This document shows, one piece after another, positions 1 to 22,331 of a stretch of DNA of 64,000 bases; the first letter of the stretch is position 1, and each line of letters begins with the position of its first letter. Under the pieces are notes generated by a model. It did no database searches. It saw only the letters and a program-made list of their open reading frames with translations, and had not been told where the DNA came from. The position numbers were made by a program, and so were the translations under genes. Where the stretch lies: positions 1 to 64,000 of the IMG/VR virus record IMGVR_UViG_3300009104_001210; one strand, written 5' to 3'.

Positions 1-615
1 GGAACAGTTAACGCAAGTGGTGGTACATTTACGGGTAATGTTGATGTAGATGGAACACTTACTGCTGGAACTGCTAAATTTGGTGAGAATGTTGCAAGTA
101 CTAATGATGGTCTTTGGTTAGACGCTGACAATTATTGGTACGATAGTGGAGTTATGAAAGCTACATCAGGTACTGTCGGTGGTTGGACTATGACGGATAC
201 AAAATTACAAAACGCTACAAACCTTTTAACATTGGATTCACAGAATCCCAAGATATACGTTGGAAGTAGTGGTGGTAGTTCTACAAGTTTATTTCTTTCT
301 GGAGATGGTCTTTATAGAATATGGATTGGTGGCACAGCCTCAGGATCTGCCCCATTCAGAGTACATAGGGATGGTACATTAACTGCAACTGGTGTAGATA
401 TCACAGGAAATATTACAGCAACGACTGGTACATTTACAGGAACAGTTAACGCAAGCGGTGGAACATTCACAGGTAGAGTTAGAGCGGGAGATGCATATTT
501 TGGAGTAGGTGCTGATGGAGGATCAAATGACGGCATTTATTTAAACTCTAACAATTATTGGTATGATACTGGAACTATAAAAGCACAAGATGGAACAATT
601 GGTGGATTTACACTT
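1..615 (+). repeat. Internal repeat in tail fibre, ~438 nt (146 aa) period
   Basis: GTVNASGGTFTG at 1-36 recurs at 439-474. Both copies are followed by NDG(L/I)(W/Y)L...NYWYD(S/T)G..KA..GT(V/I)GG(W/F)T. Confidence 0.8.
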
Positions 616-1851
616 GGAAGTTCTAAATTAACTACTACAGGAGGAGCTAACGATCAATCTACAATTGGATTTGGTATATCTACTCCAGAATCTAAACTTC
701 ATGTTATTCAGGATGCTACTGATAGTGATACATTCACAATTGGTTCAACACCATCTTGGGAATGTAAAGATGGAAAAACTGCTTGGGCTGCGAGAATTGG
801 TGTAGATCCATATACAGGCGGAACAGCAAACAATTTTTATCAAGGTGCAATCGGTATGTTAGGTATTAAAGATTCATATCGAATACGAAATTTTGGTCTG
901 TACATGGAAACCATACAGGGTCAAAATAAAGGATGGGCTGGCAGTGATATAGATGTTAGTGGTTCTTATGGTTACGGAGTACAATTTAGTTTTGCTTCAT
1001 CTAAAGTTCAATATGGAGTAAGATCAATTCAAGCGTTTGGACCTGGCCAAGGTACTGCAGGATCTGCTACGGGTGAAATTATGCATATTGGAGCATTGTA
1101 TGATCAGGGAGATGGTTTAGATGTTCAAAGTAACACCCGCACATGGACTACAAGTGGTGGATTAATGCAGAGGGGAGTACAAATCGTCTGTAAGGGAAAC
1201 TATGATGTAGCTATAACATCACACCCAACTAATGCTTCGAATGCAATGAGGGATCTAAGTTATGTATCGGCTTTATCTTTGAATAATTTGCGTACTGGTA
1301 CTAATGGTCAATCAGCTGGACATGGTATTTTTGCTACTGGCTCACAATGGAAACATTTTATTGGTGCATCCACGTTAATTGGAGATCCTTCAGATGGAAA
1401 TAATAAAACACCTTCTTATACGTTAGATGTAAGGGGAGATATACGAGCAACAGGTAACATTACAGCATATTCTGATATTAGAGATAAAGAAAATATAGAA
1501 ACCATTTCTGGGTCTCTTGGTATAATTAATGATATTAGAGGAGTTAAGTTTGATTGGAATGAAGATTATAAATTTGAACACAGAGATAGGAATAAAGGTT
1601 CTGACCGATATATAAAAGCGCTTGCATCAGGATCAGCACCTATGTTAGATCCAAACTTAGAGGGAAGACAAATTGGCGTCATCGCTCAGGAAATAGAGTC
1701 GGTACTACCAGAATTGGTGTTTGAGGATGATAGGGGACGTAAAAATGTATCATATTCAAACTTGACAGCGGTTTTGATAGAGGCTGTTAAGGAACAACAA
1801 GAACAAATCGAAGAATTGAAACAAGAAATAAAGGAGATAAAAGATGCCTGA
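1..1851 (+). CDS. Tail fibre/spike protein with C-terminal peptidase S74 intramolecular chaperone (5' end outside window)
   Basis: Frame 1 is open from base 1 (GTVNASGGTFTG...). G/T/S-rich beta-repeat sequence. C-terminus YSDIRDKENI...GVKFDW...IGVIAQEIE.VLPELV...VSYSNLTAVLIEAVKEQQEQIEELK is the S74 signature plus coiled coil. Confidence 0.88.
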   Translation, partial: GTVNASGGTFTGNVDVDGTLTAGTAKFGENVASTNDGLWLDADNYWYDSGVMKATSGTVGGWTMTDTKLQNATNLLTLDSQNPKIYVGSSGGSSTSLFLSGDGLYRIWIGGTASGSAPFRVHRDGTLTATGVDITGNITATTGTFTGTVNASGGTFTGRVRAGDAYFGVGADGGSNDGIYLNSNNYWYDTGTIKAQDGTIGGFTLGSSKLTTTGGANDQSTIGFGISTPESKLHVIQDATDSDTFTIGSTPSWECKDGKTAWAARIGVDPYTGGTANNFYQGAIGMLGIKDSYRIRNFGLYMETIQGQNKGWAGSDIDVSGSYGYGVQFSFASSKVQYGVRSIQAFGPGQGTAGSATGEIMHIGALYDQGDGLDVQSNTRTWTTSGGLMQRGVQIVCKGNYDVAITSHPTNASNAMRDLSYVSALSLNNLRTGTNGQSAGHGIFATGSQWKHFIGASTLIGDPSDGNNKTPSYTLDVRGDIRATGNITAYSDIRDKENIETISGSLGIINDIRGVKFDWNEDYKFEHRDRNKGSDRYIKALASGSAPMLDPNLEGRQIGVIAQEIESVLPELVFEDDRGRKNVSYSNLTAVLIEAVKEQQEQIEELKQEIKEIKDA

Positions 1852-2014
1852 AGAAACACCCGTCGTTAAATGTGATTGCCCAGAATGTTCGGATACTTGT
1901 AAAAGAGATTATCCATGCCAAAGTAATGGTTGTGATTGTGATTGTTGTTGTCATGCTTCTGAATCTGGTTATTACACCATAACAGATAAAATGAAAGAAA
2001 AGGCTAATGGCTAG
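1844..2014 (+). CDS. Small Cys-rich protein (56 aa, 10 Cys), metallothionein-like or RiPP-precursor-like; not in the ORF track
   Basis: AAGGAG at 1831-1836 and ATG at 1844. Translation MPEETPVVKCDCPECSDTCKRDYPCQSNGCDCDCCCHASESGYYTITDKMKEKANG*. Overlaps both neighbours by 8 nt and fills the gap between them. Confidence 0.8.
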   Translation: MPEETPVVKCDCPECSDTCKRDYPCQSNGCDCDCCCHASESGYYTITDKMKEKANG

Positions 2015-2975
2015 AAGTAATGGAGATACTTTAGGATTAGGAGAAATGGGGTATGCAACCGGCGATAGCGCCAATACTACCACAACGGTAAGTATGCAGG
2101 ATACTTCAGGAGGAACATCTACAGTTTCATTTGATGATTTTGGAATTGATGCTTGTACTAATCCAACAGCCAATGATAGTAATGCTTTACATCCAGAAGA
2201 TACTGCTGAAACTTATACTGCAAATTTTACATCTGCAGGTTCACTTTTTTTATCTAAAATAGGAAATCAAACTCGTAATTTTACTTGGTCTATTTCCCCA
2301 GATGTCGGAGCATTTACATCAGCTGATGTAGGTGCGATATATACAGCACCATTAGTATCTTCAGATACAGCTGCAACTATATCATATAAATTTCATGATT
2401 CGTTTAATGATCACGCAACAGATTATAATACAAATAAATCAATAAGTATAACTATTACAGATACATATGGAGCAGGATGCTTTTCTTTAGATACTAAAAT
2501 TTTGTTATCTGATGGAACGGAAAAAGAAATACAAGATTTAGATATGTCTGATAAGTTAATGGGGATGAAAATGCCAGGTATGCCAACAAAAGGAAAATCA
2601 GCTGATGATTGGCATACCTATGCAAGTTGGACTACAAGCTCTATTGATTTATTTGAAACTTGTGAAGTTGAAATAGAAAGTTTGTGGTTTGATTATTTTG
2701 AAAGTTATTATAAGATTACTACAGAAGAAGATAAAGTTTTAACTGTAACATATGAACACCCTCTTTTTATATTGAGAGAAGGAATTTATCAATGGACACA
2801 TGCTCAAACTTTACAAGAAACAGATAAACTTGTAAATTATAAAAAAGAAGTAGTATCAATAACCAATATAGAGTTTAGAGATGAAGAACTTGAAACTTGT
2901 AATGTTGATGTTGAACCCGAAGACGTTTATTTTGCAGAACATTTTTTAGTGCATAATACTTTTCATGATAAATAG
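2007..2975 (+). CDS. Virion-associated-type protein with C-terminal Hint (intein-like) domain ending HN-T
   Basis: C158 (GAG-CFSLDTKILLSDG), block B VTYEHP, block F/G CNVDVEPEDVYFAEHFLVHN317, then TFHDK*. N-terminal part is S/T/D/G-rich and paralogous to 4029..5144. Confidence 0.85.
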   Translation: MARSNGDTLGLGEMGYATGDSANTTTTVSMQDTSGGTSTVSFDDFGIDACTNPTANDSNALHPEDTAETYTANFTSAGSLFLSKIGNQTRNFTWSISPDVGAFTSADVGAIYTAPLVSSDTAATISYKFHDSFNDHATDYNTNKSISITITDTYGAGCFSLDTKILLSDGTEKEIQDLDMSDKLMGMKMPGMPTKGKSADDWHTYASWTTSSIDLFETCEVEIESLWFDYFESYYKITTEEDKVLTVTYEHPLFILREGIYQWTHAQTLQETDKLVNYKKEVVSITNIEFRDEELETCNVDVEPEDVYFAEHFLVHNTFHDK

Positions 2976-2987
2976 GGATAGTATCAT

Positions 2988-3992
2988 ATGAGTTATGATG
3001 TTTATTATAGTACAGGTGGTGGTTCACTTATTATGGGGGGATCTGATGTATGGGTTAATTATTGGTTACAAAATATAGCACCAAAATTAAAACGACCATC
3101 TAAGTTATTAATTCATAGAGCACCAAATTCAATTGTAGAATTTGATTCACCAATTGAAGTTGTTTGGCAAAATGAACCTGAAGTATTTAAAAAAGTATTA
3201 GGAGAAGCTGAAAGAATTCATATTTTACATGGTTATTATCATCCTAAAAAAGAAATAATGGATAATTTGGATAAAATTTATTCTAATATCTTACACGTAA
3301 CAGTAGAAAAATCTTTACGAGCAGGTGTTTATTTAGGATTAAAAAAGTTGAAACATTTTGCTGCAAATATATCTTATGAAAAAGAAATATTAAAAGCATC
3401 TAAAAATAATATATGGATTGGAGTAGATGATACAACATATCATAAAGATAATGATATAATTGATATTCCAAATTTTTATGAATTTAAGAGAAAAAAAGAT
3501 GTGGTTATGAATGATAGAGTTGGATTTTTAGCTAGAATGGAAACAAGAAAAGCACCACACTTTATAAACGATATAGATTCTTGCATGCTTACAGATATAA
3601 GTGATGTTCAATGGTGGAGAGATAATTTAGAATTTCAATGGAATAAAACAAAAGTATTTCAATTTCAATATAAAAATTTACAAAAGTTTTTAGAAAGGGA
3701 TGATTGGGGAATATCACATTCAGCTCACGTATATGAACCATTTGGCTATTCTATATTTGAAGCAATTGATTATGGTAAGTTACCAATATTAGCAGCTGAT
3801 TGGTTATTTGGTAAGTTAGAGTATCCTTTTAGAGCAGCAAATAAACAAGAATTTGAAAATACACATTCTCAAATTTGTAAACTGAGTGAAAAAGAAAGAC
3901 AGTATTGGTTATTAAAGTTAAGAGCTTATTTATCAAGATATGATAATAAAGATGAATGGATCAACAAATATTTGGAAATATACAATTCTTGA
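2988..3992 (+). CDS. GT-B glycosyltransferase, GT4-like
   Basis: N-terminal GGSDVW loop. C-terminal EPFGYSIFEA (E-x7-E) followed by GKLPIL. Confidence 0.7.
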   Translation: MSYDVYYSTGGGSLIMGGSDVWVNYWLQNIAPKLKRPSKLLIHRAPNSIVEFDSPIEVVWQNEPEVFKKVLGEAERIHILHGYYHPKKEIMDNLDKIYSNILHVTVEKSLRAGVYLGLKKLKHFAANISYEKEILKASKNNIWIGVDDTTYHKDNDIIDIPNFYEFKRKKDVVMNDRVGFLARMETRKAPHFINDIDSCMLTDISDVQWWRDNLEFQWNKTKVFQFQYKNLQKFLERDDWGISHSAHVYEPFGYSIFEAIDYGKLPILAADWLFGKLEYPFRAANKQEFENTHSQICKLSEKERQYWLLKLRAYLSRYDNKDEWINKYLEIYNS

Positions 3993-4000
3993 TATTTATA
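3993..4000 (+). promoter_or_regulatory. TATTTATA intergenic motif (putative phage promoter)
   Basis: Exact motif in the 36-nt gap upstream of 4029. Recurs in every gap of 30 nt or more. Confidence 0.55.
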
Positions 4001-4028
4001 ATTGATAAACTATATATAGGAATGTTTA

Positions 4029-5144
4029 ATGGCAACAGATGCAAATCAAGATTTATCGTTAGGAAAACTGAGAAGAGCGGTAGATGGAAATGACTCATAT
4101 ACAGCAGAATCTAAATTAGGAGAAGATGCTGGCGGCACTACTTCTGCAGATTCAGATGTAGGAATGTCCAATTTTTCTATTTCAGCAGTTAGTTCAACTC
4201 TTTCTGGAAGTAAACACCAAGATGAAGGTACAGCTGAAACCGTAACAATGGAATTTTCAGATGCAGGTTCAAGGTTTATTTCACGAATAGCTGGTCGTTC
4301 TGAGAACTTTACTTGGGCAAAAAACAACGCCGTTGGTTCAGGAACTTATACAATAGAATCTGGAGATTATACGGCGACGGGAACAGCAGGTGCTATTTCT
4401 AGTGTAGATACAGCAAATACAGTAGGTGATGGTGTTAGGGGAACATTTCATGCTGCACATACAGGAGATTGGCGAGTAGGAATTAGTGCTTCATTTCATG
4501 AAGATGGACAATCAGATGGATATAATGATCACGCAACAAGATATAATACTGCTATAAAGAAAAAAACTCAAGTAGAAGACGTATATAATAGTGTTGCTAT
4601 AACTTGTTTTACACCTGATACTGAAATGCTTATGGCAGATGGAACATCTAAACAGATACAAGATGTACTTATTGGTGATGAGATTGTTGCTATGACATTA
4701 CCAAACGATGTAGAAGATTTTAAAGATTATAGTGTTGATAGTATAGATGGATTAGAACAAACTACAGCAAAAGTTGTTAATATGTTCTTTGATTTTGCTG
4801 ATGAGTATTATATTATTAATGGTGATATTAAAGTAACAGGAGAACATCCTATTTTTATTCAGGTTCCTGAAGGATTTTATGTAGATGTTGAAGATTCTTC
4901 TGAATTTTATTGTTGGGAATATGTTGTTAACTTGAAAGTTGGTCAAATTATGTATAATAAGAATTTGAATGAAGTTCCAATTGATGTTATTGAGAAAGTA
5001 GAAAAAGAAATAGAAATTGTAAATGTAGATGTTGATGGTCCAAATACATATTTTGCAGGTGGAGTATTGGTTCATAATAAAGGAGCAGCATCAGTATCAG
5101 ATACAGGTGATGGAATAGGACACTCATTTACTGAAGACGGATAG
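4029..5144 (+). CDS. Virion-associated-type protein with C-terminal Hint (BIL-A-like) domain ending HN-K
   Basis: C193 (AIT-CFTPDTEMLMADG), VTGEHP, VNVDVDGPNTYFAGGVLVHN350 plus a 21-aa tail. Shares AGS.F(L/I)S(K/R)I......NFTW and NDHAT.YNT with 2007..2975. Confidence 0.85.
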   Translation: MATDANQDLSLGKLRRAVDGNDSYTAESKLGEDAGGTTSADSDVGMSNFSISAVSSTLSGSKHQDEGTAETVTMEFSDAGSRFISRIAGRSENFTWAKNNAVGSGTYTIESGDYTATGTAGAISSVDTANTVGDGVRGTFHAAHTGDWRVGISASFHEDGQSDGYNDHATRYNTAIKKKTQVEDVYNSVAITCFTPDTEMLMADGTSKQIQDVLIGDEIVAMTLPNDVEDFKDYSVDSIDGLEQTTAKVVNMFFDFADEYYIINGDIKVTGEHPIFIQVPEGFYVDVEDSSEFYCWEYVVNLKVGQIMYNKNLNEVPIDVIEKVEKEIEIVNVDVDGPNTYFAGGVLVHNKGAASVSDTGDGIGHSFTEDG

Positions 5145-5180
5145 GAGCAATAAATCCTTTAATTTGAGAAGAGTTTTTTA

Positions 5181-5188
5181 TATTTATA
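5181..5188 (+). promoter_or_regulatory. TATTTATA intergenic motif (putative promoter of the first island operon)
   Basis: Exact motif 21 nt upstream of ATG 5210. Confidence 0.55.
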
Positions 5189-5209
5189 ACTGAGTAATAG
5201 CAGGTTTTA

Positions 5210-6793
5210 ATGGATAATAGGTTAGCAATAATTGTTCCTTATCGAGATAGAAGAAAACAGTTAGATGTTTTCATTCCGCATATGGATTCCTTTTTTCAAA
5301 ATAAAGGAATTGATTATCAGATAATAGTAGCAGAACAAAGAGATGATAGGCCTTTTAACAGAGGTAAATTATGTAACGCCGTGTTTGATTTAATTAAAGA
5401 CGACTTTGATTATTTTTGCTTTCACGACGTAGACTTGTTGCCATTAACAGATGATTGTGATTATTCTTATGTAGATAAACCAACTCATGTAGCAGCTATC
5501 ATTGACGATGTATATCTACCATATGAAGAGTTTATTGGTGGAGTATTCTTAATCAATAAAGAGCATTTCGAACAAATTAATGGATTTTCTGATGAATATT
5601 GGGGATGGGGATATGAAGATAATGATTTGTTAGAAAGAATGAGAAAAAATGATATTCCATTAAATACAGTTATAGATATTTCTTCTGTTTCAAAAAATCC
5701 AAGATATTCTTTTGATCAAGTACATTTACACAATAATTTTAAAACTAAGATATTAAATACTATTAAACTACATGGTGATATTTGTATAGAAGTACCAACA
5801 TCGGATTCTATAGATAATTTAACTAATGGTAGTTTTTCTTTTTCTATTTGGGCAAAACCAACAATAGAAGATTATGAACAATTTATATTATCAAGACCAC
5901 CAATTGGGTTAGGAATGTTATATACAGTAGAAGGTGAATTTAAATTTTTATTGTGGGATGAGAATGATGAAGCTCATGTTATAAAAGATTATAGAATACC
6001 AAATGAATGGTATCATTTATGTATGACATATGATACTAAAACTAAAATGTTTAGTGCATATATTAATGGTTCTTTAATAAAAACGATTAAAGTTGAATCA
6101 TTAAAAAACTTTAGTGGAGAGTGGTTTTATATTGGAGCAGATTCTTCTAATGAAAATAATTTTAGAGGAAGTGTTAGTGAAGCAACATTATGGAATGTTT
6201 GTTTAGATGAAAACGAAACTAAAAAATTATATTTTGAACAAGTAACTAATTTGATACATAGTCCAATAATGTGGCATAAGTTTGATAAGTGTTACGGAAG
6301 TTATATATTAGGTACAGAAGTTAATAGTGGAAATTTTCAAAAAATAAAAGTATATATTATGCTAGATGAATCTACTTATGAAAATAACGGAACAGTTAAA
6401 AGTTTTTCTAAGGAAATAAAACCTCTTCAATCGAAAGCTACAATAAATCCTATATTAGAAAAGATAATATTGGGTACTACTATAAAGATACCTAATAGAA
6501 GATATGGAATTTATAAAACTTTAGTTAATGATAAAACATGGAAAAGAGGAAGACAGGTTACAGATAAAGATTATGTTCATAGTAGAGTAAGACATTATAA
6601 GTCTACTGATGGAAAGGATATTGTAACTAAATTAAAATCATATGATCCAGATATTTTAGAAAATTCAGATATATTTTTTGATGAAGTTAGAGAAGGATCA
6701 GTGATTAATGTTGGTTTAAATAAATTAGATTATAAAGTTAGAAACAGACAAGAATTTGAAGATATTCATGAATGGATAGAAATAATAACATAG
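5210..6793 (+). CDS. GT7 (beta-1,4-galactosyltransferase-like) glycosyltransferase with inserted LamG domain
   Basis: LAIIVPYRDR, FNRGKLCN, FHDVD, GWGYEDND. LamG (FSFSIWAKP...WYHLCMTYD...YINGSL...YIGA...FRGSVSEATLWN). GT7 C-terminus resumes at IPNRRYG and ends GLNKLDY. Confidence 0.85.
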   Translation: MDNRLAIIVPYRDRRKQLDVFIPHMDSFFQNKGIDYQIIVAEQRDDRPFNRGKLCNAVFDLIKDDFDYFCFHDVDLLPLTDDCDYSYVDKPTHVAAIIDDVYLPYEEFIGGVFLINKEHFEQINGFSDEYWGWGYEDNDLLERMRKNDIPLNTVIDISSVSKNPRYSFDQVHLHNNFKTKILNTIKLHGDICIEVPTSDSIDNLTNGSFSFSIWAKPTIEDYEQFILSRPPIGLGMLYTVEGEFKFLLWDENDEAHVIKDYRIPNEWYHLCMTYDTKTKMFSAYINGSLIKTIKVESLKNFSGEWFYIGADSSNENNFRGSVSEATLWNVCLDENETKKLYFEQVTNLIHSPIMWHKFDKCYGSYILGTEVNSGNFQKIKVYIMLDESTYENNGTVKSFSKEIKPLQSKATINPILEKIILGTTIKIPNRRYGIYKTLVNDKTWKRGRQVTDKDYVHSRVRHYKSTDGKDIVTKLKSYDPDILENSDIFFDEVREGSVINVGLNKLDYKVRNRQEFEDIHEWIEIIT

Positions 6794-12070: not shown

Positions 12071-13479
12071 AAGAACATTACTTAGGAGTATGTATTCCTT
12101 ATAGAGATAACGGAGATGGTGTAAGAAAAAAACATTTAGATACATTAGTTCCTTATCTTACTAAGTTTCTCGATGAAAGGAATATAAAACATAAAATGTT
12201 TATTGGTCATCAAGTAGATGATAAGTTATTTAATCGTAGTGGTACAAAGAATGCCGCATTTTTAGCAGCTAAAGAAGAGGGTTGTGATTATGTAGCATTT
12301 CATGATGTAGATATGTTGCCCGAAGACGGAGCAGATTACAGCTATCCCGAAGACAACCCAATCCACATAGCAACCTATCTATCTCAATGGGATTACAATC
12401 TCAGAGATGTAGAATACTTTGGTGGAGTTGTGTTGTTTACTATAGAGCAGTTTGAAGCAGTCAATGGATATCATACCAATTATTGGGGTTGGGGTATGGA
12501 AGATGATGACTTGTTTTGGAGATGTCATTTAAAGGGAATGACAAACGATAGATATGTTGAAGGACCAGGTGAAACAAATATTTGTACACTAAATGGTGAA
12601 TCAGATTTTATACAAATACCTTCTTCTAGAACGCTTCATAGTATTGGTAGTAGAAGTCATGAAATTGAGTTATTAGTAAGACCACATCAGTTTGCTGAAA
12701 AACAATATTTGATAGGAGATGAAAATAAAAAATATATTGAATATCCTATTTTTATTAGATATGGTTGGGATTATAGTATAAGTTATAATAATTCAAAAGC
12801 TATATCAAGTATGATTTGGACTTGGAAAAATGATTTATTATATAATTGGGCTAAAAGATATCCGAATGAATGGACATTAGTTAATGTAAAAGTTGATGAT
12901 GTTAAAAGAGAAATTAGATTGTTAATTAATGGAGAAGAAACAGATGCACGACATGGAACAGGAACAGAATCACCATTAGTATATAATATGCCACTTAAAA
13001 GATATGGTGGGTCTCCGATTTATCTTGGTAAAGCAAATAGTAATAATGCAAAACAACAAAATTTTATGGGAGATATAGCACATATTAAAATAAAAAATAA
13101 TAGAGATAAAGTAGTTTTACATTATGACTTTGATGAAGTTATAGATAATATAGTTATTGATAAGAGTGGTAATGATAATAATGGAATTATGAATGGTTGT
13201 GAGATAAAAAAGGAAGTTGTTGATAAAATACCATTTACAGTTGTACCACATAGAAGGTTTAGTAAATTTGAATGTTTATTTCATGAAGATGAAGGTATTG
13301 TTAAAGGAAATTTTGTGAGTGATACTACACCTAGAAATGAAAGAATATATAAGTTAAAGATGCAACAGAAAAAAATAGATATAGATACAGATGAGTATGG
13401 AGTAAAAAATATGGAATATGAATTAGTTAGTATAGAAGATTGTTATAATTATCATAAAATGGTTAATGTAAAGTTCTAA
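12067..13479 (+). CDS. GT7 glycosyltransferase with inserted LamG domain
   Basis: VCIPYRD, FNRSGTKN, FHDVD, YFGGV, GWGMEDDD. LamG insert. Resumes VVPHRRFSKF...GVKNMEY. Confidence 0.88.
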   Translation: MKEHYLGVCIPYRDNGDGVRKKHLDTLVPYLTKFLDERNIKHKMFIGHQVDDKLFNRSGTKNAAFLAAKEEGCDYVAFHDVDMLPEDGADYSYPEDNPIHIATYLSQWDYNLRDVEYFGGVVLFTIEQFEAVNGYHTNYWGWGMEDDDLFWRCHLKGMTNDRYVEGPGETNICTLNGESDFIQIPSSRTLHSIGSRSHEIELLVRPHQFAEKQYLIGDENKKYIEYPIFIRYGWDYSISYNNSKAISSMIWTWKNDLLYNWAKRYPNEWTLVNVKVDDVKREIRLLINGEETDARHGTGTESPLVYNMPLKRYGGSPIYLGKANSNNAKQQNFMGDIAHIKIKNNRDKVVLHYDFDEVIDNIVIDKSGNDNNGIMNGCEIKKEVVDKIPFTVVPHRRFSKFECLFHEDEGIVKGNFVSDTTPRNERIYKLKMQQKKIDIDTDEYGVKNMEYELVSIEDCYNYHKMVNVKF

Positions 13480-19083: not shown

Positions 19084-20110
19084 GTTATTAAAAATATTAC
19101 CAGGTGAAAATAAGTATATAAATGTAACTTGGCAAGTAAATGATTGGTGTAATTTTAGATGTTCTTATTGTAATGAGGGTAATTGGGGTGGTAACAATTT
19201 AAATAAAGATACAGATAAGTACATAGAGTTTTTAGATTCTTTGATATCAAAATATCAATCATTTGGTTATGAGTCTTTTAAATTCTTTTTTTCGGGAGGA
19301 GAACCAACATATTGGAAATCATTAATACCAATAGCAAAATTTTTACATAAAAAATGTGATAAACCATTATTAGCTATAAATACAAATTTAAGCAATCCTT
19401 TGAGTTGGTGGTTAGATAATTATTATTACTTTCAAGATGTTGTAGCTAGTTATCATATTGAATATATTAAATACAATAAGTATATTAAGAATGCTAAGTT
19501 TTTACAAGATAGAGTAAATTATTTAGCATTGAGAATTATGATGGAAGAAAGTAGGTTTCAAGAGTGTATTGATATTGGTAGAAAGATGTATAGCGACATG
19601 GATAATTGTGTTGTAGAATGGGTCCCACTACTTAAAGATTTATCAGTAGATGCAGAAATGTGGGATTATGACGAAGAATGGAAAAATGATTTTTTCAAAA
19701 AGACGGATGGTTATATGAGAAAATGGGGAAAAGTAAATGAAAGACGAAAGTTTAAACCTGCTTATAGTTTAGAGGTTTGGAGTGATGGTAAAATTAGACC
19801 TGTAAACTCTAATAGATTATCAGCAGAGAAGTTAACTAATTTTCAAGGATGGACTTGTTTTTTAAATGATGCTATTTTTATAAATACAAGGGGTGATGTT
19901 AGCGCTGGTAGTTGTGGTGTTAGTGATATATTTACTAATATAAACACATGGAAACAAGAAGATTTAGAAAATTTAGGAAATCCTGTTATTTGTCCAAAGA
20001 ATCATTGTACTTGTGGTACGGATGTAATAATACCAAAAATAAATCCAAAAGTTTATAAAGATGTAGGAGATTATAAGATTATTAAAAAGGAAAATATAAA
20101 TGCAACCTAA
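19076..20110 (+). CDS. Radical SAM protein with C-terminal twitch-like Cys cluster
   Basis: DWCNFRCSYC; SGGEPT; NTN; ASYH; C-terminal WTCF...SCG...ICPKNHCTCGTD. Confidence 0.88.
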   Translation: MTELLKILPGENKYINVTWQVNDWCNFRCSYCNEGNWGGNNLNKDTDKYIEFLDSLISKYQSFGYESFKFFFSGGEPTYWKSLIPIAKFLHKKCDKPLLAINTNLSNPLSWWLDNYYYFQDVVASYHIEYIKYNKYIKNAKFLQDRVNYLALRIMMEESRFQECIDIGRKMYSDMDNCVVEWVPLLKDLSVDAEMWDYDEEWKNDFFKKTDGYMRKWGKVNERRKFKPAYSLEVWSDGKIRPVNSNRLSAEKLTNFQGWTCFLNDAIFINTRGDVSAGSCGVSDIFTNINTWKQEDLENLGNPVICPKNHCTCGTDVIIPKINPKVYKDVGDYKIIKKENINAT

Positions 20111-22331
20111 GATAGCAGTTTGTATGTTGCCAGCTTGGTCTTTAGAGACACCACCATTGAGTCTTGGACTGTTAGCAGGTGCTTTAAAAACAAGAGATAG
20201 AGTTGCGAAACAATTTCATATTAACTTACTATCTGCTGAATATGTAGATGAAGAAGCTAGAGAAGAATTATGGGCACCTACGGGTCACTTCTTTTGGACT
20301 AATGATCATTCATTCAATGATAAAATTCTTCCTACTTATAAAGAATATTGGGATAGTTTGATAGATGAACTTAAAGATTATGATATAGTTACTTTTACAA
20401 CATATTTTTCTAATATAGTTGTTACTGATTATTTTGCTGAAAGATTATATAAGGCTAATCCAAAACTTCATATTTTTTATGGTGGACCATATTGTTGGAA
20501 TGCACCTAAAGGTGGACTTTGTATATCATCACCCGATGGTGAACCCGATAGGTATTGGATAAAATTATCATGTGATAATGAAGGAGAAATTGTTATTAAT
20601 GATTTGGTAGATTGTTATGAGAAAGGTATTAGTTATGAAACTGTAAAAGGAATATGGACATTTGGTTCAACTTCTAAAGATAGACATAAATTTACAGGTA
20701 TGAGAATACCAGAAAAAGAGTTAGATACAATACCAACGCCTATTTGGGATGGTGTAGATTTGGAAATTTACGCTAAACATCACTATTCAGGACATGCACA
20801 TTTACCATTACAAGGTTCACGTGGTTGTACTTATAAATGTACATTTTGTTCAGAGACAAGAATTTTTAGATTTAAGAAAGGTAGAAAGATTAAAGAAGAA
20901 ATTTTAGAACAAACAAGAAAATATGGAATTACTCATTTCTCATTTGTGGATTCTCTTGTTAATGGTTCTATGCCACAATTTAAAATATTAGTAAATGAAT
21001 TAGCAGAAGAGGTTGAAAAAGATCCAAAATTGAAAGATTTAAGTCTTGGTGGATATGCAAGAACCCATAAAGAAATGGATAGTAAATTGATGAGAAAGGC
21101 TGCTAAAGCAGGATTTAAATGGTTATCTATTGGAGTGGAAAGTGGAACGCCTAAAATACTTGAGGTTATAGAGAAAAGACAAACAGTTGAGGGAATCGAA
21201 CAATTGTGGAAAGCTTGTTGGAGACACGGAATACGTATGGATGCTAATTGGATATCAGGCTATCCAAGAGAAAATCATATTGATTGGATAATGAGTTTAC
21301 ATTTTTTATATAAGAATAAACATTATATACCCGTAGTAGCAGCAAATCAGTTTCCTGCAGGAGTAACTCCAGGTACAGCACTTGATCAATATAGAGATGT
21401 ATTTAATATTTCACCATTAGGAAATATATTTTATGATTGGATTAGTAATGATGTAAAAAATACTTATGTTAATAGATTTTTAAGAGTGAAGTTATGTCAT
21501 ATGTTTTTAGAAATATGGAAAATTTACTATTCGGGATTTTGGACTGTAAGAGAGAATATTAAACACATAAAATTTAAAGATCCTAAATCAATGTTTAATA
21601 AAGAACAGTATCAAGAATGGGATCAAAGAGCAAATGGAACATTTTGGCAACAGAGACATAATTGGCATGGAAATAGAGAACAATTTAAGATTAGAAACTT
21701 AAATTATAATGTACCATATTTAGAATTTGCTAATAAAGCTGATACAGGAGAATACGATGCTTCAGTTAGTATTGAAGATACTATAAAAATACAAACAAGA
21801 AACGAAATAAGAGTTTGGTGTTGGCTAATGTATCAGATAGCCGGACCATTTGATATTGAAGTGGAGTTTGATGAAGATTATAGTGAACGAAATATAGATG
21901 GTGCTAGAATGATTAGTAAATTTAAATTTCAATCAGAAATGGATGGTAGTTATAGATTATCAATAGATAATAAATTGACAATAGATAAAAGAGCAAAAAG
22001 AACTATTCATATACAATTACCTATAGAATTAAAACATAGTGATAAAGAAATGTGGAAAAAAAGAAAAAAACAAATAGCGAGAAGATTTCATGAAGATGAA
22101 GAACCTTTACATATAGGTGATCATTTAAAAATTAATAAGGATGGTACTATGGTAACTTTTTATGATATTAGTTTTCATGATAAGTATCACGATGTTGGAA
22201 ATATGAATGATGAGTATGAAGACGAAGATTATTTTCGGAAAAAATATGGAGTACCAAATTATCTTGATGCATTAGATATAGAAAAATATAAACTTAATTT
22301 AAAAAGAACTTTTATGACAGGAAAACATTAA
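20100..22331 (+). CDS. B12-binding radical SAM protein with long C-terminal extension
   Basis: PPLSLGLLAG, YGGP, SRGCTYKCTFC, SIGVESG, WISGYPRE. Confidence 0.85.
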   Translation: MQPKIAVCMLPAWSLETPPLSLGLLAGALKTRDRVAKQFHINLLSAEYVDEEAREELWAPTGHFFWTNDHSFNDKILPTYKEYWDSLIDELKDYDIVTFTTYFSNIVVTDYFAERLYKANPKLHIFYGGPYCWNAPKGGLCISSPDGEPDRYWIKLSCDNEGEIVINDLVDCYEKGISYETVKGIWTFGSTSKDRHKFTGMRIPEKELDTIPTPIWDGVDLEIYAKHHYSGHAHLPLQGSRGCTYKCTFCSETRIFRFKKGRKIKEEILEQTRKYGITHFSFVDSLVNGSMPQFKILVNELAEEVEKDPKLKDLSLGGYARTHKEMDSKLMRKAAKAGFKWLSIGVESGTPKILEVIEKRQTVEGIEQLWKACWRHGIRMDANWISGYPRENHIDWIMSLHFLYKNKHYIPVVAANQFPAGVTPGTALDQYRDVFNISPLGNIFYDWISNDVKNTYVNRFLRVKLCHMFLEIWKIYYSGFWTVRENIKHIKFKDPKSMFNKEQYQEWDQRANGTFWQQRHNWHGNREQFKIRNLNYNVPYLEFANKADTGEYDASVSIEDTIKIQTRNEIRVWCWLMYQIAGPFDIEVEFDEDYSERNIDGARMISKFKFQSEMDGSYRLSIDNKLTIDKRAKRTIHIQLPIELKHSDKEMWKKRKKQIARRFHEDEEPLHIGDHLKINKDGTMVTFYDISFHDKYHDVGNMNDEYEDEDYFRKKYGVPNYLDALDIEKYKLNLKRTFMTGKH

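What the first reader, a model, noticed from the sequence alone, without database searches (positions are those of the whole stretch)
1844..2014. Hidden 56-aa ORF with 10 cysteines between the tail fibre and the first Hint protein
Seen: strong RBS, overlaps with both neighbours, and core CDCPECSDTC-x5-C-x4-CDCDCCCH. Established: CxC/CC clusters with a terminal His typify metallothioneins (SmtA-like), and Cys-rich short peptides are substrates of SPASM/twitch rSAMs (ranthipeptides, sactipeptides). Inference: either a phage metallothionein or Fe-S/Zn buffer serving nine Fe-S enzymes, a metal-bound tail accessory, or a RiPP precursor.
Basis: partly seen in the sequence, partly recalled or inferred. 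Interest (0 to 1): 0.65.

Follow-up and report, generated by a model that had tools for sequence, protein, structure and literature searches.

The report
Orphan cysteine-rich mini-gene behind tail fibre
A real-looking 56-codon gene packed with cysteines sits between the giant tail-fibre gene and a Hint-domain gene of a 216-kb marine T4-like phage, but it exists only in this one phage lineage, matches no known family, and its function (most likely a small metal-binding protein) remains unproven.

Summary
It is not hidden, because public gene calls list it on more than 50 marine contigs.

It has no relatives. Pfam, PHROGs, NCBIfam, PDB sequences, a word search of 5.8 billion proteins and a full HMMER scan of 1.84 billion representatives returned only itself and its own alleles (84-100% identity).

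Seven alleles keep nine Cys and His37. The tenth Cys (C34) varies: C/S/F/Y. Substitutions are otherwise as often amino-acid-changing as neutral drift predicts. The frame stays open through three different 3' junctions with the Hint gene.

Phages whose Hint protein is 31-40% identical carry unrelated 142-392-aa genes in this slot. Sixty-six other fibres with a related end have no such ORF behind them.

Membership of the SmtA-type metallothioneins or of the SCIFF/ranthipeptide precursors was tested by sequence and not met. The nearest radical-SAM gene is 11.5 kb away.

Best reading: a young orphan gene for a metal-thiolate mini-protein, made by translational coupling within the fibre-Hint operon. 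This is inferred. There is no evidence of expression or a fold.

The parts
1..1851 (+). 3' part of the giant tail-fibre gene. The frame is open at the window start. The product is 3,689-3,764 aa on longer contigs.
   Evidence: PF13884 Peptidase_S74 at aa 440-522 of the 565-aa reading. PHROG tail-fibre families align to its very end. Full-length calls on L004 and L006. S74 match at 1471-1719.
1831..1836 (+). Shine-Dalgarno AAGGAG, 7 nt before the ATG
   Evidence: Sequence. The hexamer at this spacing precedes 0.34% of all ATGs in the genome.
1844..2014 (+). The 56-aa cysteine-rich ORF (stop included)
   Evidence: Listed as a called gene on public contigs. Frame kept open in seven alleles.
1844..1851 (+). 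ATGCCTGA: the ORF's start overlaps the fibre gene's stop
1871..1954 (+). Cys core, residues 10-37. Nine invariant Cys plus His37, with variable C34 (codon 1943-1945).
   Evidence: Allele alignment A1. Codon 34 reads TGT, AGT, TTT or TAT in different alleles.
1930..1945 (+). Short tandem repeat TTGTGA x2.7, which overlaps the codons of C30, D31, C32, D33 and C34
2007..2014 (+). ATGGCTAG: the start of the Hint gene overlaps the ORF's stop
   Evidence: In other alleles the junction is a 14-nt or a 1-nt overlap.
2007..2975 (+). First Hint-domain protein (322 aa)
   Evidence: Sub-threshold Hint/intein Pfam hits. PHROG virion structural protein. The same N-terminus is found in relatives of 31-40% identity, so 2007 is its true start.

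Best explanation
This is a genuine but very young orphan gene, restricted to one lineage of a marine T4-like phage.

**Shown**
- It lies inside the late fibre-Hint operon.
- It has no promoter or terminator of its own.
- It has a strong ribosome-binding site.
- It overlaps the stop of the fibre gene and the start of the Hint gene.

**Inferred**
- Ribosomes pass from the fibre gene through it into the Hint gene, so the peptide is made late, together with the fibre and Hint proteins.
- The product is acidic (pI 4.5), 6.2 kDa, and has no hydrophobic core. It most likely folds only by binding metal, Zn(II)-type thiolate sites, through nine conserved Cys and His37.
- It most likely acts as a small accessory of this particular fibre/Hint module, not as a general metabolic gene.
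For: - **Gene signals.** ORF, AAGGAG and both overlaps are present. There is no promoter-like site on the coding strand, no terminator-like site and no Rfam match in 1500-2400. Codon usage is best in this frame.
- **Frame kept open.** It is open in seven alleles with three different 3' junctions.
- **Scaffold kept.** Nine Cys and His37 are invariant. The probability that 18 random substitutions spare them and create no stop is 0.027.
- **Composition.** No Leu, Phe or Trp, and pI 4.5.
- **A variable slot.** Relatives carry unrelated 142/143-, 337- and 392-aa genes there, also abutting the Hint start. This fits a module-specific accessory.
- **Fast-evolving neighbours.** The fibre end (pN/pS 0.49-0.77) and the Hint gene (0.15-1.48, depending on the pair) change amino acids quickly, as the peptide does.
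- **Transcription nearby.** Contigs from RNA libraries lie on the two flanking genes.
Against: - No evidence of expression or translation covers the ORF itself.
- Substitutions across alleles are 14 non-synonymous to 4 synonymous. This equals the neutral expectation of 4.35 synonymous, so there is no overall purifying selection.
- One of the ten Cys is replaced three different ways.
- There is no homologue anywhere, so no deep conservation can be shown.
- The codon score lies below the 5th percentile of real genes.
- The AlphaFold2 model is unusable, pLDDT 53.
- The complex test with the fibre tip gave no answer.
- 66 other fibres with a related S74-type end have no comparable ORF behind them. 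The genome's second S74 fibre has none either.
- Metal binding itself is untested.
Confidence: 0.4

Rival explanations
1. Relay ORF. The frame is kept open only to carry ribosomes from the fibre gene to the weakly initiated Hint gene, by termination-reinitiation. The peptide is a by-product with little or no function of its own.
For: - Both ends overlap the neighbouring genes.
- The Hint gene has only AAGG in front of its ATG.
- Relatives keep an abutting upstream ORF of unrelated sequence at the Hint start.
- The overall ratio of non-synonymous to synonymous changes is neutral.
- The stop moves but always stays at the Hint ATG.
Against: - It does not explain 18% Cys against 0.97% in the genome's long genes, or the top rank among coding-strand ORFs.
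- It does not explain the invariance of nine Cys and His37 (P about 0.06 for that alone).
Confidence: 0.2
2. Metallothionein-like metal buffer. It would be an auxiliary gene that stores or delivers Zn, Fe or Cu during infection, for example for the nine radical-SAM enzymes.
For: - It has CxC and CC motifs, nine Cys plus one His in 28 residues, small size and an acidic charge.
- Nine Radical_SAM matches lie in the same 64 kb.
- Metallothioneins have been listed as candidate viral auxiliary genes (PMC13317609; PMC12917443).
Against: - No metallothionein model or chain matches.
- It holds three Tyr. From my own knowledge, aromatic residues are rare in metallothioneins.
- It sits in the structural operon, not in the radical-SAM island, which starts 11.5 kb away.
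- Relatives with radical-SAM genes next to the Hint gene lack it, and no homologue exists elsewhere.
Confidence: 0.1
3. Disulfide-knotted or metal-knotted variable knob. A Cys scaffold would carry fast-changing loops, exposed on the virion and under diversifying selection for host recognition.
For: - Against the most distant allele, 10 non-synonymous and 1 synonymous change give pN/pS 2.2, all outside the nine Cys.
- It is located behind the fibre gene.
Against: - The counts are too small for significance.
- The cluster of changes ends near codon 39, where the downstream DNA becomes 99.5% identical. A recombination breakpoint therefore explains the clustering.
- The Cys count switches between 10 and 9 among alleles, which a fixed disulfide framework would not tolerate.
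- There is no signal peptide or hydrophobic segment.
Confidence: 0.1
4. RiPP precursor, modified by one of the SPASM/twitch radical-SAM enzymes (thioether cross-links).
For: - It is a Cys-rich short peptide.
- Four N-terminal-twitch radical-SAM genes (NF033640) and one B12 radical-SAM gene lie in the window.
- These show weak sub-threshold similarity to ranthipeptide and sactipeptide maturases.
Against: - No precursor family matches.
- The nearest radical-SAM gene is 11.5 kb and eight genes away, set among glycosyltransferases and sugar-nucleotide enzymes.
- Maturase-model scores lie far below their cut-offs.
- The peptide is coupled to structural genes.
- No homologue accompanies related radical-SAM sets.
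Confidence: 0.05
5. Chance ORF in a 155-nt spacer. It is not translated, or is translated without consequence.
For: - It is an orphan.
- Substitutions follow the neutral pattern.
- The codon score is low.
- Part of the Cys run coincides with a short hexamer repeat.
Against: - A perfect AAGGAG sits at ideal spacing (0.34% of ATGs).
- The frame fills the whole gap in a genome where 84 of 168 neighbouring long genes overlap.
- The frame is kept through indels at the 3' end.
- The Cys and His residues are spared.
Confidence: 0.1

Closest known systems
Bacterial metallothioneins of the SmtA/BmtA type (Pfam PF02069; structure 1JJD, recalled from memory)
   Same: Similar length, about 56 aa. Nine Cys plus His as likely ligands. 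CxC motifs. No hydrophobic core.
   Different: No sequence match to any Pfam metallothionein model or PDB chain at E up to 10. Three Tyr. Different Cys spacing. It is encoded in a phage structural operon and found in one lineage only.
SCIFF / ranthipeptide and sactipeptide precursors with SPASM radical-SAM maturases
   Same: A short Cys-rich peptide. SPASM/twitch radical-SAM genes occur in the same genome.
   Different: No NCBIfam precursor match. No adjacent maturase. The radical-SAM genes belong to NF033640 and sit in a glycosylation-type island 11.5 kb away.
Genes that follow tail-fibre genes in T4-like phages (gp38-type chaperones or adhesins; from my own knowledge)
   Same: Its position is directly behind the distal fibre gene, it is co-transcribed, and it is variable between related phages.
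   Different: It is far smaller and not homologous. This fibre already carries its own S74 intramolecular chaperone. No binding is shown.
C2H2 zinc-finger knuckle (TFIIIA fingers, 1TF3/1TF6)
   Same: Local resemblance of residues 17-32 (Y-P-C-x4-C after a basic linker) to the finger linker and knuckle.
   Different: E 0.36-0.48, which is not significant. There is no His-x3-His partner. This is a lead only.

Membership tests
Bacterial metallothionein (SmtA/BmtA, PF02069) and other Pfam metallothionein families | Sequence match to the family profile | tested here: not met
   hmmscan of the peptide and of all seven alleles against Pfam-A at E up to 1 and up to 10 found 0 families.
Bacterial metallothionein (SmtA/BmtA, PF02069) and other Pfam metallothionein families | Similarity to a solved metallothionein chain | tested here: not met
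   phmmer and a profile search of all PDB chains at E up to 10 returned only TFIIIA, at E 0.36-0.48.
Metallothionein in the broad, functional sense | Small size, high Cys content, few aromatic residues | tested here: inconclusive
   6.2 kDa and 18% Cys fit. Three Tyr do not fit well.
Metallothionein in the broad, functional sense | Metal-thiolate cluster with defined stoichiometry | not testable with these tools
   Needs ICP-MS or native MS on the peptide. The AlphaFold2 model has pLDDT 53.
Ranthipeptide/SCIFF or sactipeptide precursor | Match to a precursor family model | tested here: not met
   NCBIfam at E up to 10 found 0 families for the two alleles scanned.
Ranthipeptide/SCIFF or sactipeptide precursor | Maturase radical-SAM gene adjacent, or in the same small cluster | tested here: not met
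   The neighbours are the fibre and Hint genes. The nearest radical-SAM gene starts at 13479. The radical-SAM genes score far below the peptide-maturase cut-offs.
Ranthipeptide/SCIFF or sactipeptide precursor | Thioether cross-links in the mature product | not testable with these tools
   Needs mass spectrometry after co-expression.
Tail-fibre accessory (chaperone or adhesin) | Gene directly behind the fibre gene, in the same operon | tested here: met
   8-nt overlap with the fibre stop, and no promoter or terminator.
Tail-fibre accessory (chaperone or adhesin) | Co-occurrence with related fibre ends in other phages | tested here: not met
   66 viral loci whose fibre end is 31-45% identical have no small ORF of 6 or more Cys behind it. 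The second S74 fibre of this genome has none either.
Tail-fibre accessory (chaperone or adhesin) | Physical binding to the fibre | tested here: inconclusive
   Complex prediction with three copies of the fibre tip plus the peptide scored 0.00, verdict 'no answer'.

The most novel reading that the evidence does not exclude
A newly born gene. A 155-nt spacer behind a giant tail-fibre gene would have become a translated Cys9-His metal-knot mini-protein whose loops change quickly. It would decorate or cap this one fibre/Hint assembly and take part in host recognition. That would be a case of de novo gene birth in a phage host-range module, caught at the population level.
Probability: 0.1. Interest if true: 0.6.

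Novelty: new variant of a known kind. Interest (0 to 1): 0.3.

Why it matters
If the peptide is made and binds metal, it would be a phage-specific metal-knot mini-protein with no relatives, tied to a giant tail fibre and to self-processing Hint proteins. It would also be an example of how orphan genes arise and are kept in host-range modules. As it stands it is one of many small orphan ORFs in T4-like genomes. The main value of this check is negative. The peptide is not an SmtA-type metallothionein by sequence. It is not placed like a RiPP precursor. It is not a conserved partner of the radical-SAM island.

Tried and rejected
**Searches for relatives that found nothing**
- megablast of 1-6000, and tblastn of the peptide, against 50,697 phage records: no match.
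- Pfam, PHROGs and NCBIfam for the peptide: nothing.
- ESM Atlas by features: best score 0.84, below the level at which shuffled proteins also score.
- Word search and full HMMER scan: only itself and its alleles.
- Scans of viral contigs and metagenome contigs with the allele alignment: nothing in viral contigs, and one further copy at 94% identity in metagenome contigs.
- blastn and tblastx of the ORF against its own genome and 91 distant loci: no source or paralogue.
- tblastn and a Cys-window scan of the syntenic loci L016-L026: nothing.

**Structure and binding**
- AlphaFold2 on the 7-row alignment gave pLDDT 53, so no fold search was run.
- Complex prediction with the fibre tip (3 copies) plus the peptide: 'no answer', score 0.00. 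This is not evidence either way.

**Other checks**
- Reading the ORF as an extension of a neighbour is rejected. The three genes lie in three different frames. The Hint N-terminus is conserved from its own Met in relatives. PHROG fibre profiles end at the fibre's stop.
- The slot genes of relatives have no Pfam or PHROG hit.
- Four literature searches found no described phage peptide of this kind.
- All non-synonymous changes fall in codons 7-39. This first looked like selection, but a recombination breakpoint explains it equally well, so I do not use it.

- No alternative genetic code was used.
- Read laying was given 2,001 letters.

Full report
**Observation.** The window is the first 64 kb of a 216,422-bp IMG/VR virus record. 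It is a T4-like phage: a Gp23 capsid match lies at 69.1 kb and there is no psbA. GC is about 29%, and 136 of 137 ORFs of 200 aa or more are on the + strand. AAGGAG lies at 1831-1836, 7 nt before the ATG. This hexamer at that spacing precedes 0.34% of all ATGs in the genome and 5 of 169 long-ORF starts. The ATG overlaps the fibre gene's TGA by 8 nt, and the TAG overlaps the Hint gene's ATG by 8 nt. The region 1500-2400 has no promoter-like site on the coding strand, no terminator-like site and no Rfam match.

The ORF is the most Cys-rich frame of 30 aa or more on the coding strand. Long genes of this genome hold 0.97% Cys. A codon model built from the long genes prefers this frame over the other five, but only by 5.3 log units. 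Real-gene windows of the same length average 18.8, with a 5th percentile of 7.5. Ten rare Cys codons probably lower the score; I did not test this. The ORF is not hidden, since it is a called gene on many public contigs. And part of the CDCDCCC run coincides with a small hexamer repeat.

**Relatives.** The peptide has none outside its own lineage.
- Pfam, PHROGs and NCBIfam give nothing, even at lax thresholds.
- PDB sequences give only a non-significant likeness to TFIIIA finger knuckles, E 0.36-0.48.
- tblastn against 50,697 phage records gives nothing.
- The word search of 5.8 billion proteins finds the peptide itself and one 96% variant.
- Because the claim rests on absence, I also ran the full HMMER scan of 1.84 billion representatives. 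It found only the query.
- Scans of the viral and metagenome contig collections with the allele alignment added one copy at 94% identity.
- The ORF's DNA has no paralogue or source in its own genome.

**Alleles.** The two 90% clusters hold seven real sequences of 84-100% identity. They also hold one unrelated 429-aa protein, which is a clustering artefact. Invariant residues are C10, C12, C15, C19, C25, C30, C32, C35, C36 and H37. C34 is Cys, Ser, Phe or Tyr, each one base away from TGT. The conserved scaffold is therefore Cys9-His, not Cys10.

I count 18 base changes among the alleles in codons 1-54: 14 non-synonymous and 4 synonymous. Random placement predicts 4.35 synonymous, so there is no overall purifying selection. 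The chance that 18 random changes spare the nine Cys and His37 is 0.063. The chance that they also create no stop is 0.027. Against the most distant allele the peptide shows pN/pS 2.2 (10 to 1 changes), the fibre end 0.49 and the Hint gene 0.15. The numbers are small, and the run of changes ends where the downstream DNA becomes 99.5% identical, so recombination can explain the clustering.

The frame stays open in all alleles although the 3' end carries indels. The stop sits 8 nt or 14 nt inside the Hint gene, or 1 nt into its ATG. Ten near-identical contigs carry the ORF without a single base change, so they add nothing on selection.

**Synteny.** Relatives of the Hint protein at 31-40% identity keep its N-terminus from the same Met, so 2007 is the true Hint start. 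In front of it these phages carry unrelated genes of 142/143, 337 or 392 aa, without Cys clusters and without any Pfam or PHROG hit. The slot between fibre and Hint is thus variable, and an ORF abutting the Hint start is the conserved feature. Among 66 other viral loci whose fibre ends in a related S74 domain, none has a small ORF with six or more Cys behind it. The second S74 fibre of this genome (81507-86234) is followed by a spacer and a 108-aa coiled-coil-like protein.

**Context.** Downstream of the two Hint genes lies a large island. It holds three GT7-plus-laminin-G glycosyltransferases, an epimerase, a dTDP-sugar epimerase and TPP-enzyme pieces. It also holds nine Radical_SAM matches between 13.5 and 49 kb. 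Four of these are NF033640 N-terminal-twitch radical-SAM proteins far above cut-off, and one is a B12-type radical-SAM. But the nearest lies 11.5 kb and eight genes from the peptide. Their scores against peptide-maturase models are far below cut-off. Relatives with a B12 radical-SAM gene next to the Hint gene have no such peptide.

**Expression and structure.** Thirteen studies of marine or seawater metagenomes hold the locus. Two metatranscriptome libraries from the source study yield contigs on 1577-1834 (fibre) and 2550-2700 (Hint), but none on the ORF. The tool warns that DNA carry-over cannot be excluded. AlphaFold2 on the shallow alignment gives pLDDT 53, so no fold search was made. The complex test with three copies of the fibre tip gave 'no answer'.

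**Interpretation.** What is shown is an ORF with strong initiation signals. It is coupled at both ends, kept open through junction rearrangements, and has a Cys9-His pattern spared by the changes that did occur.

What is inferred is the function. A 6.2-kDa acidic chain with no Leu, Phe or Trp, one Ile and two Val cannot form a hydrophobic core. If it folds, it does so around metal-thiolate sites or disulfides. The switch between 10 and 9 Cys argues against a fixed disulfide framework and for metal ligation.

My estimates are:
- about 0.8 that it is translated;
- about 0.6, given translation, that it binds metal;
- about 0.4 for the whole best reading, a metal-knot accessory of this fibre/Hint module.

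The rivals, in order, are a relay ORF whose peptide is incidental (0.2), a metallothionein-like buffer (0.1), a variable surface knob (0.1), a chance ORF (0.1) and a RiPP precursor (0.05).

**Comparison and novelty.** Metallothioneins have been listed as candidate viral auxiliary genes (PMC13317609; PMC12917443), so a phage metallothionein would not be new in kind. This peptide fails the sequence tests for those families and for RiPP precursors. It works, at most, like a small metal-thiolate protein. It is an orphan, and I rate it a new variant of a known kind, of modest interest until metal binding or translation is shown.

Noticed in passing
window 1-1851 and the end of G000 (about 215.7-216.4 kb); L004, L006: The record is circularly permuted inside a giant fibre gene. 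On longer contigs the product is 3,689-3,764 aa, with PKD, intein-like and Peptidase_S74 hits.
   Followed up: partly
window 13479-49309: Nine Radical_SAM matches. Four are NF033640 N-terminal-twitch radical-SAM proteins at 298-384 bits against a cut-off of 170, and one is a B12 radical-SAM at 20100-22331. They are interleaved with GT7+LamG glycosyltransferases and sugar-nucleotide enzymes. This looks like a glycan-modification island, not a peptide-maturation cluster.
   Followed up: partly
window 2007-2975 and 4029-5144: Two Hint-domain proteins, scoring below Pfam cut-offs. The Hint module lies at the C-terminus with only a few residues after the HN motif. The N-terminus is conserved in relatives of 31-40% identity, which sit beside sheath and tube genes in L024/L025.
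   Followed up: partly
L016/L017 about 2900-3000 (fibre C-terminal region): The fibre of the distant relatives carries a CxxC...CxxC zinc-ribbon-like insert just after the start of the S74-like region, in place of a separate Cys-rich gene.
   Followed up: no
window 1781-1848: In one seawater run several short, deeper contigs match only the last 55-60 nt of the fibre gene, and one continues at 2406. The conserved 3' end of the S74 region seems to be shared by other fibre genes and may be a recombination joint. L015 also diverges upstream of 1740.
   Followed up: no
protein cluster of P0001: An unrelated 429-aa membrane-protein-like sequence (P0031) is filed in the 90% cluster of the 56-aa peptide. 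This is a database artefact.
   Followed up: yes
G000 106684-106863, 194637-194756, 199465-199749 and others: Several other small ORFs fill gaps between long genes with overlaps at both ends, so the architecture of the Cys-rich ORF is common in this genome.
   Followed up: no
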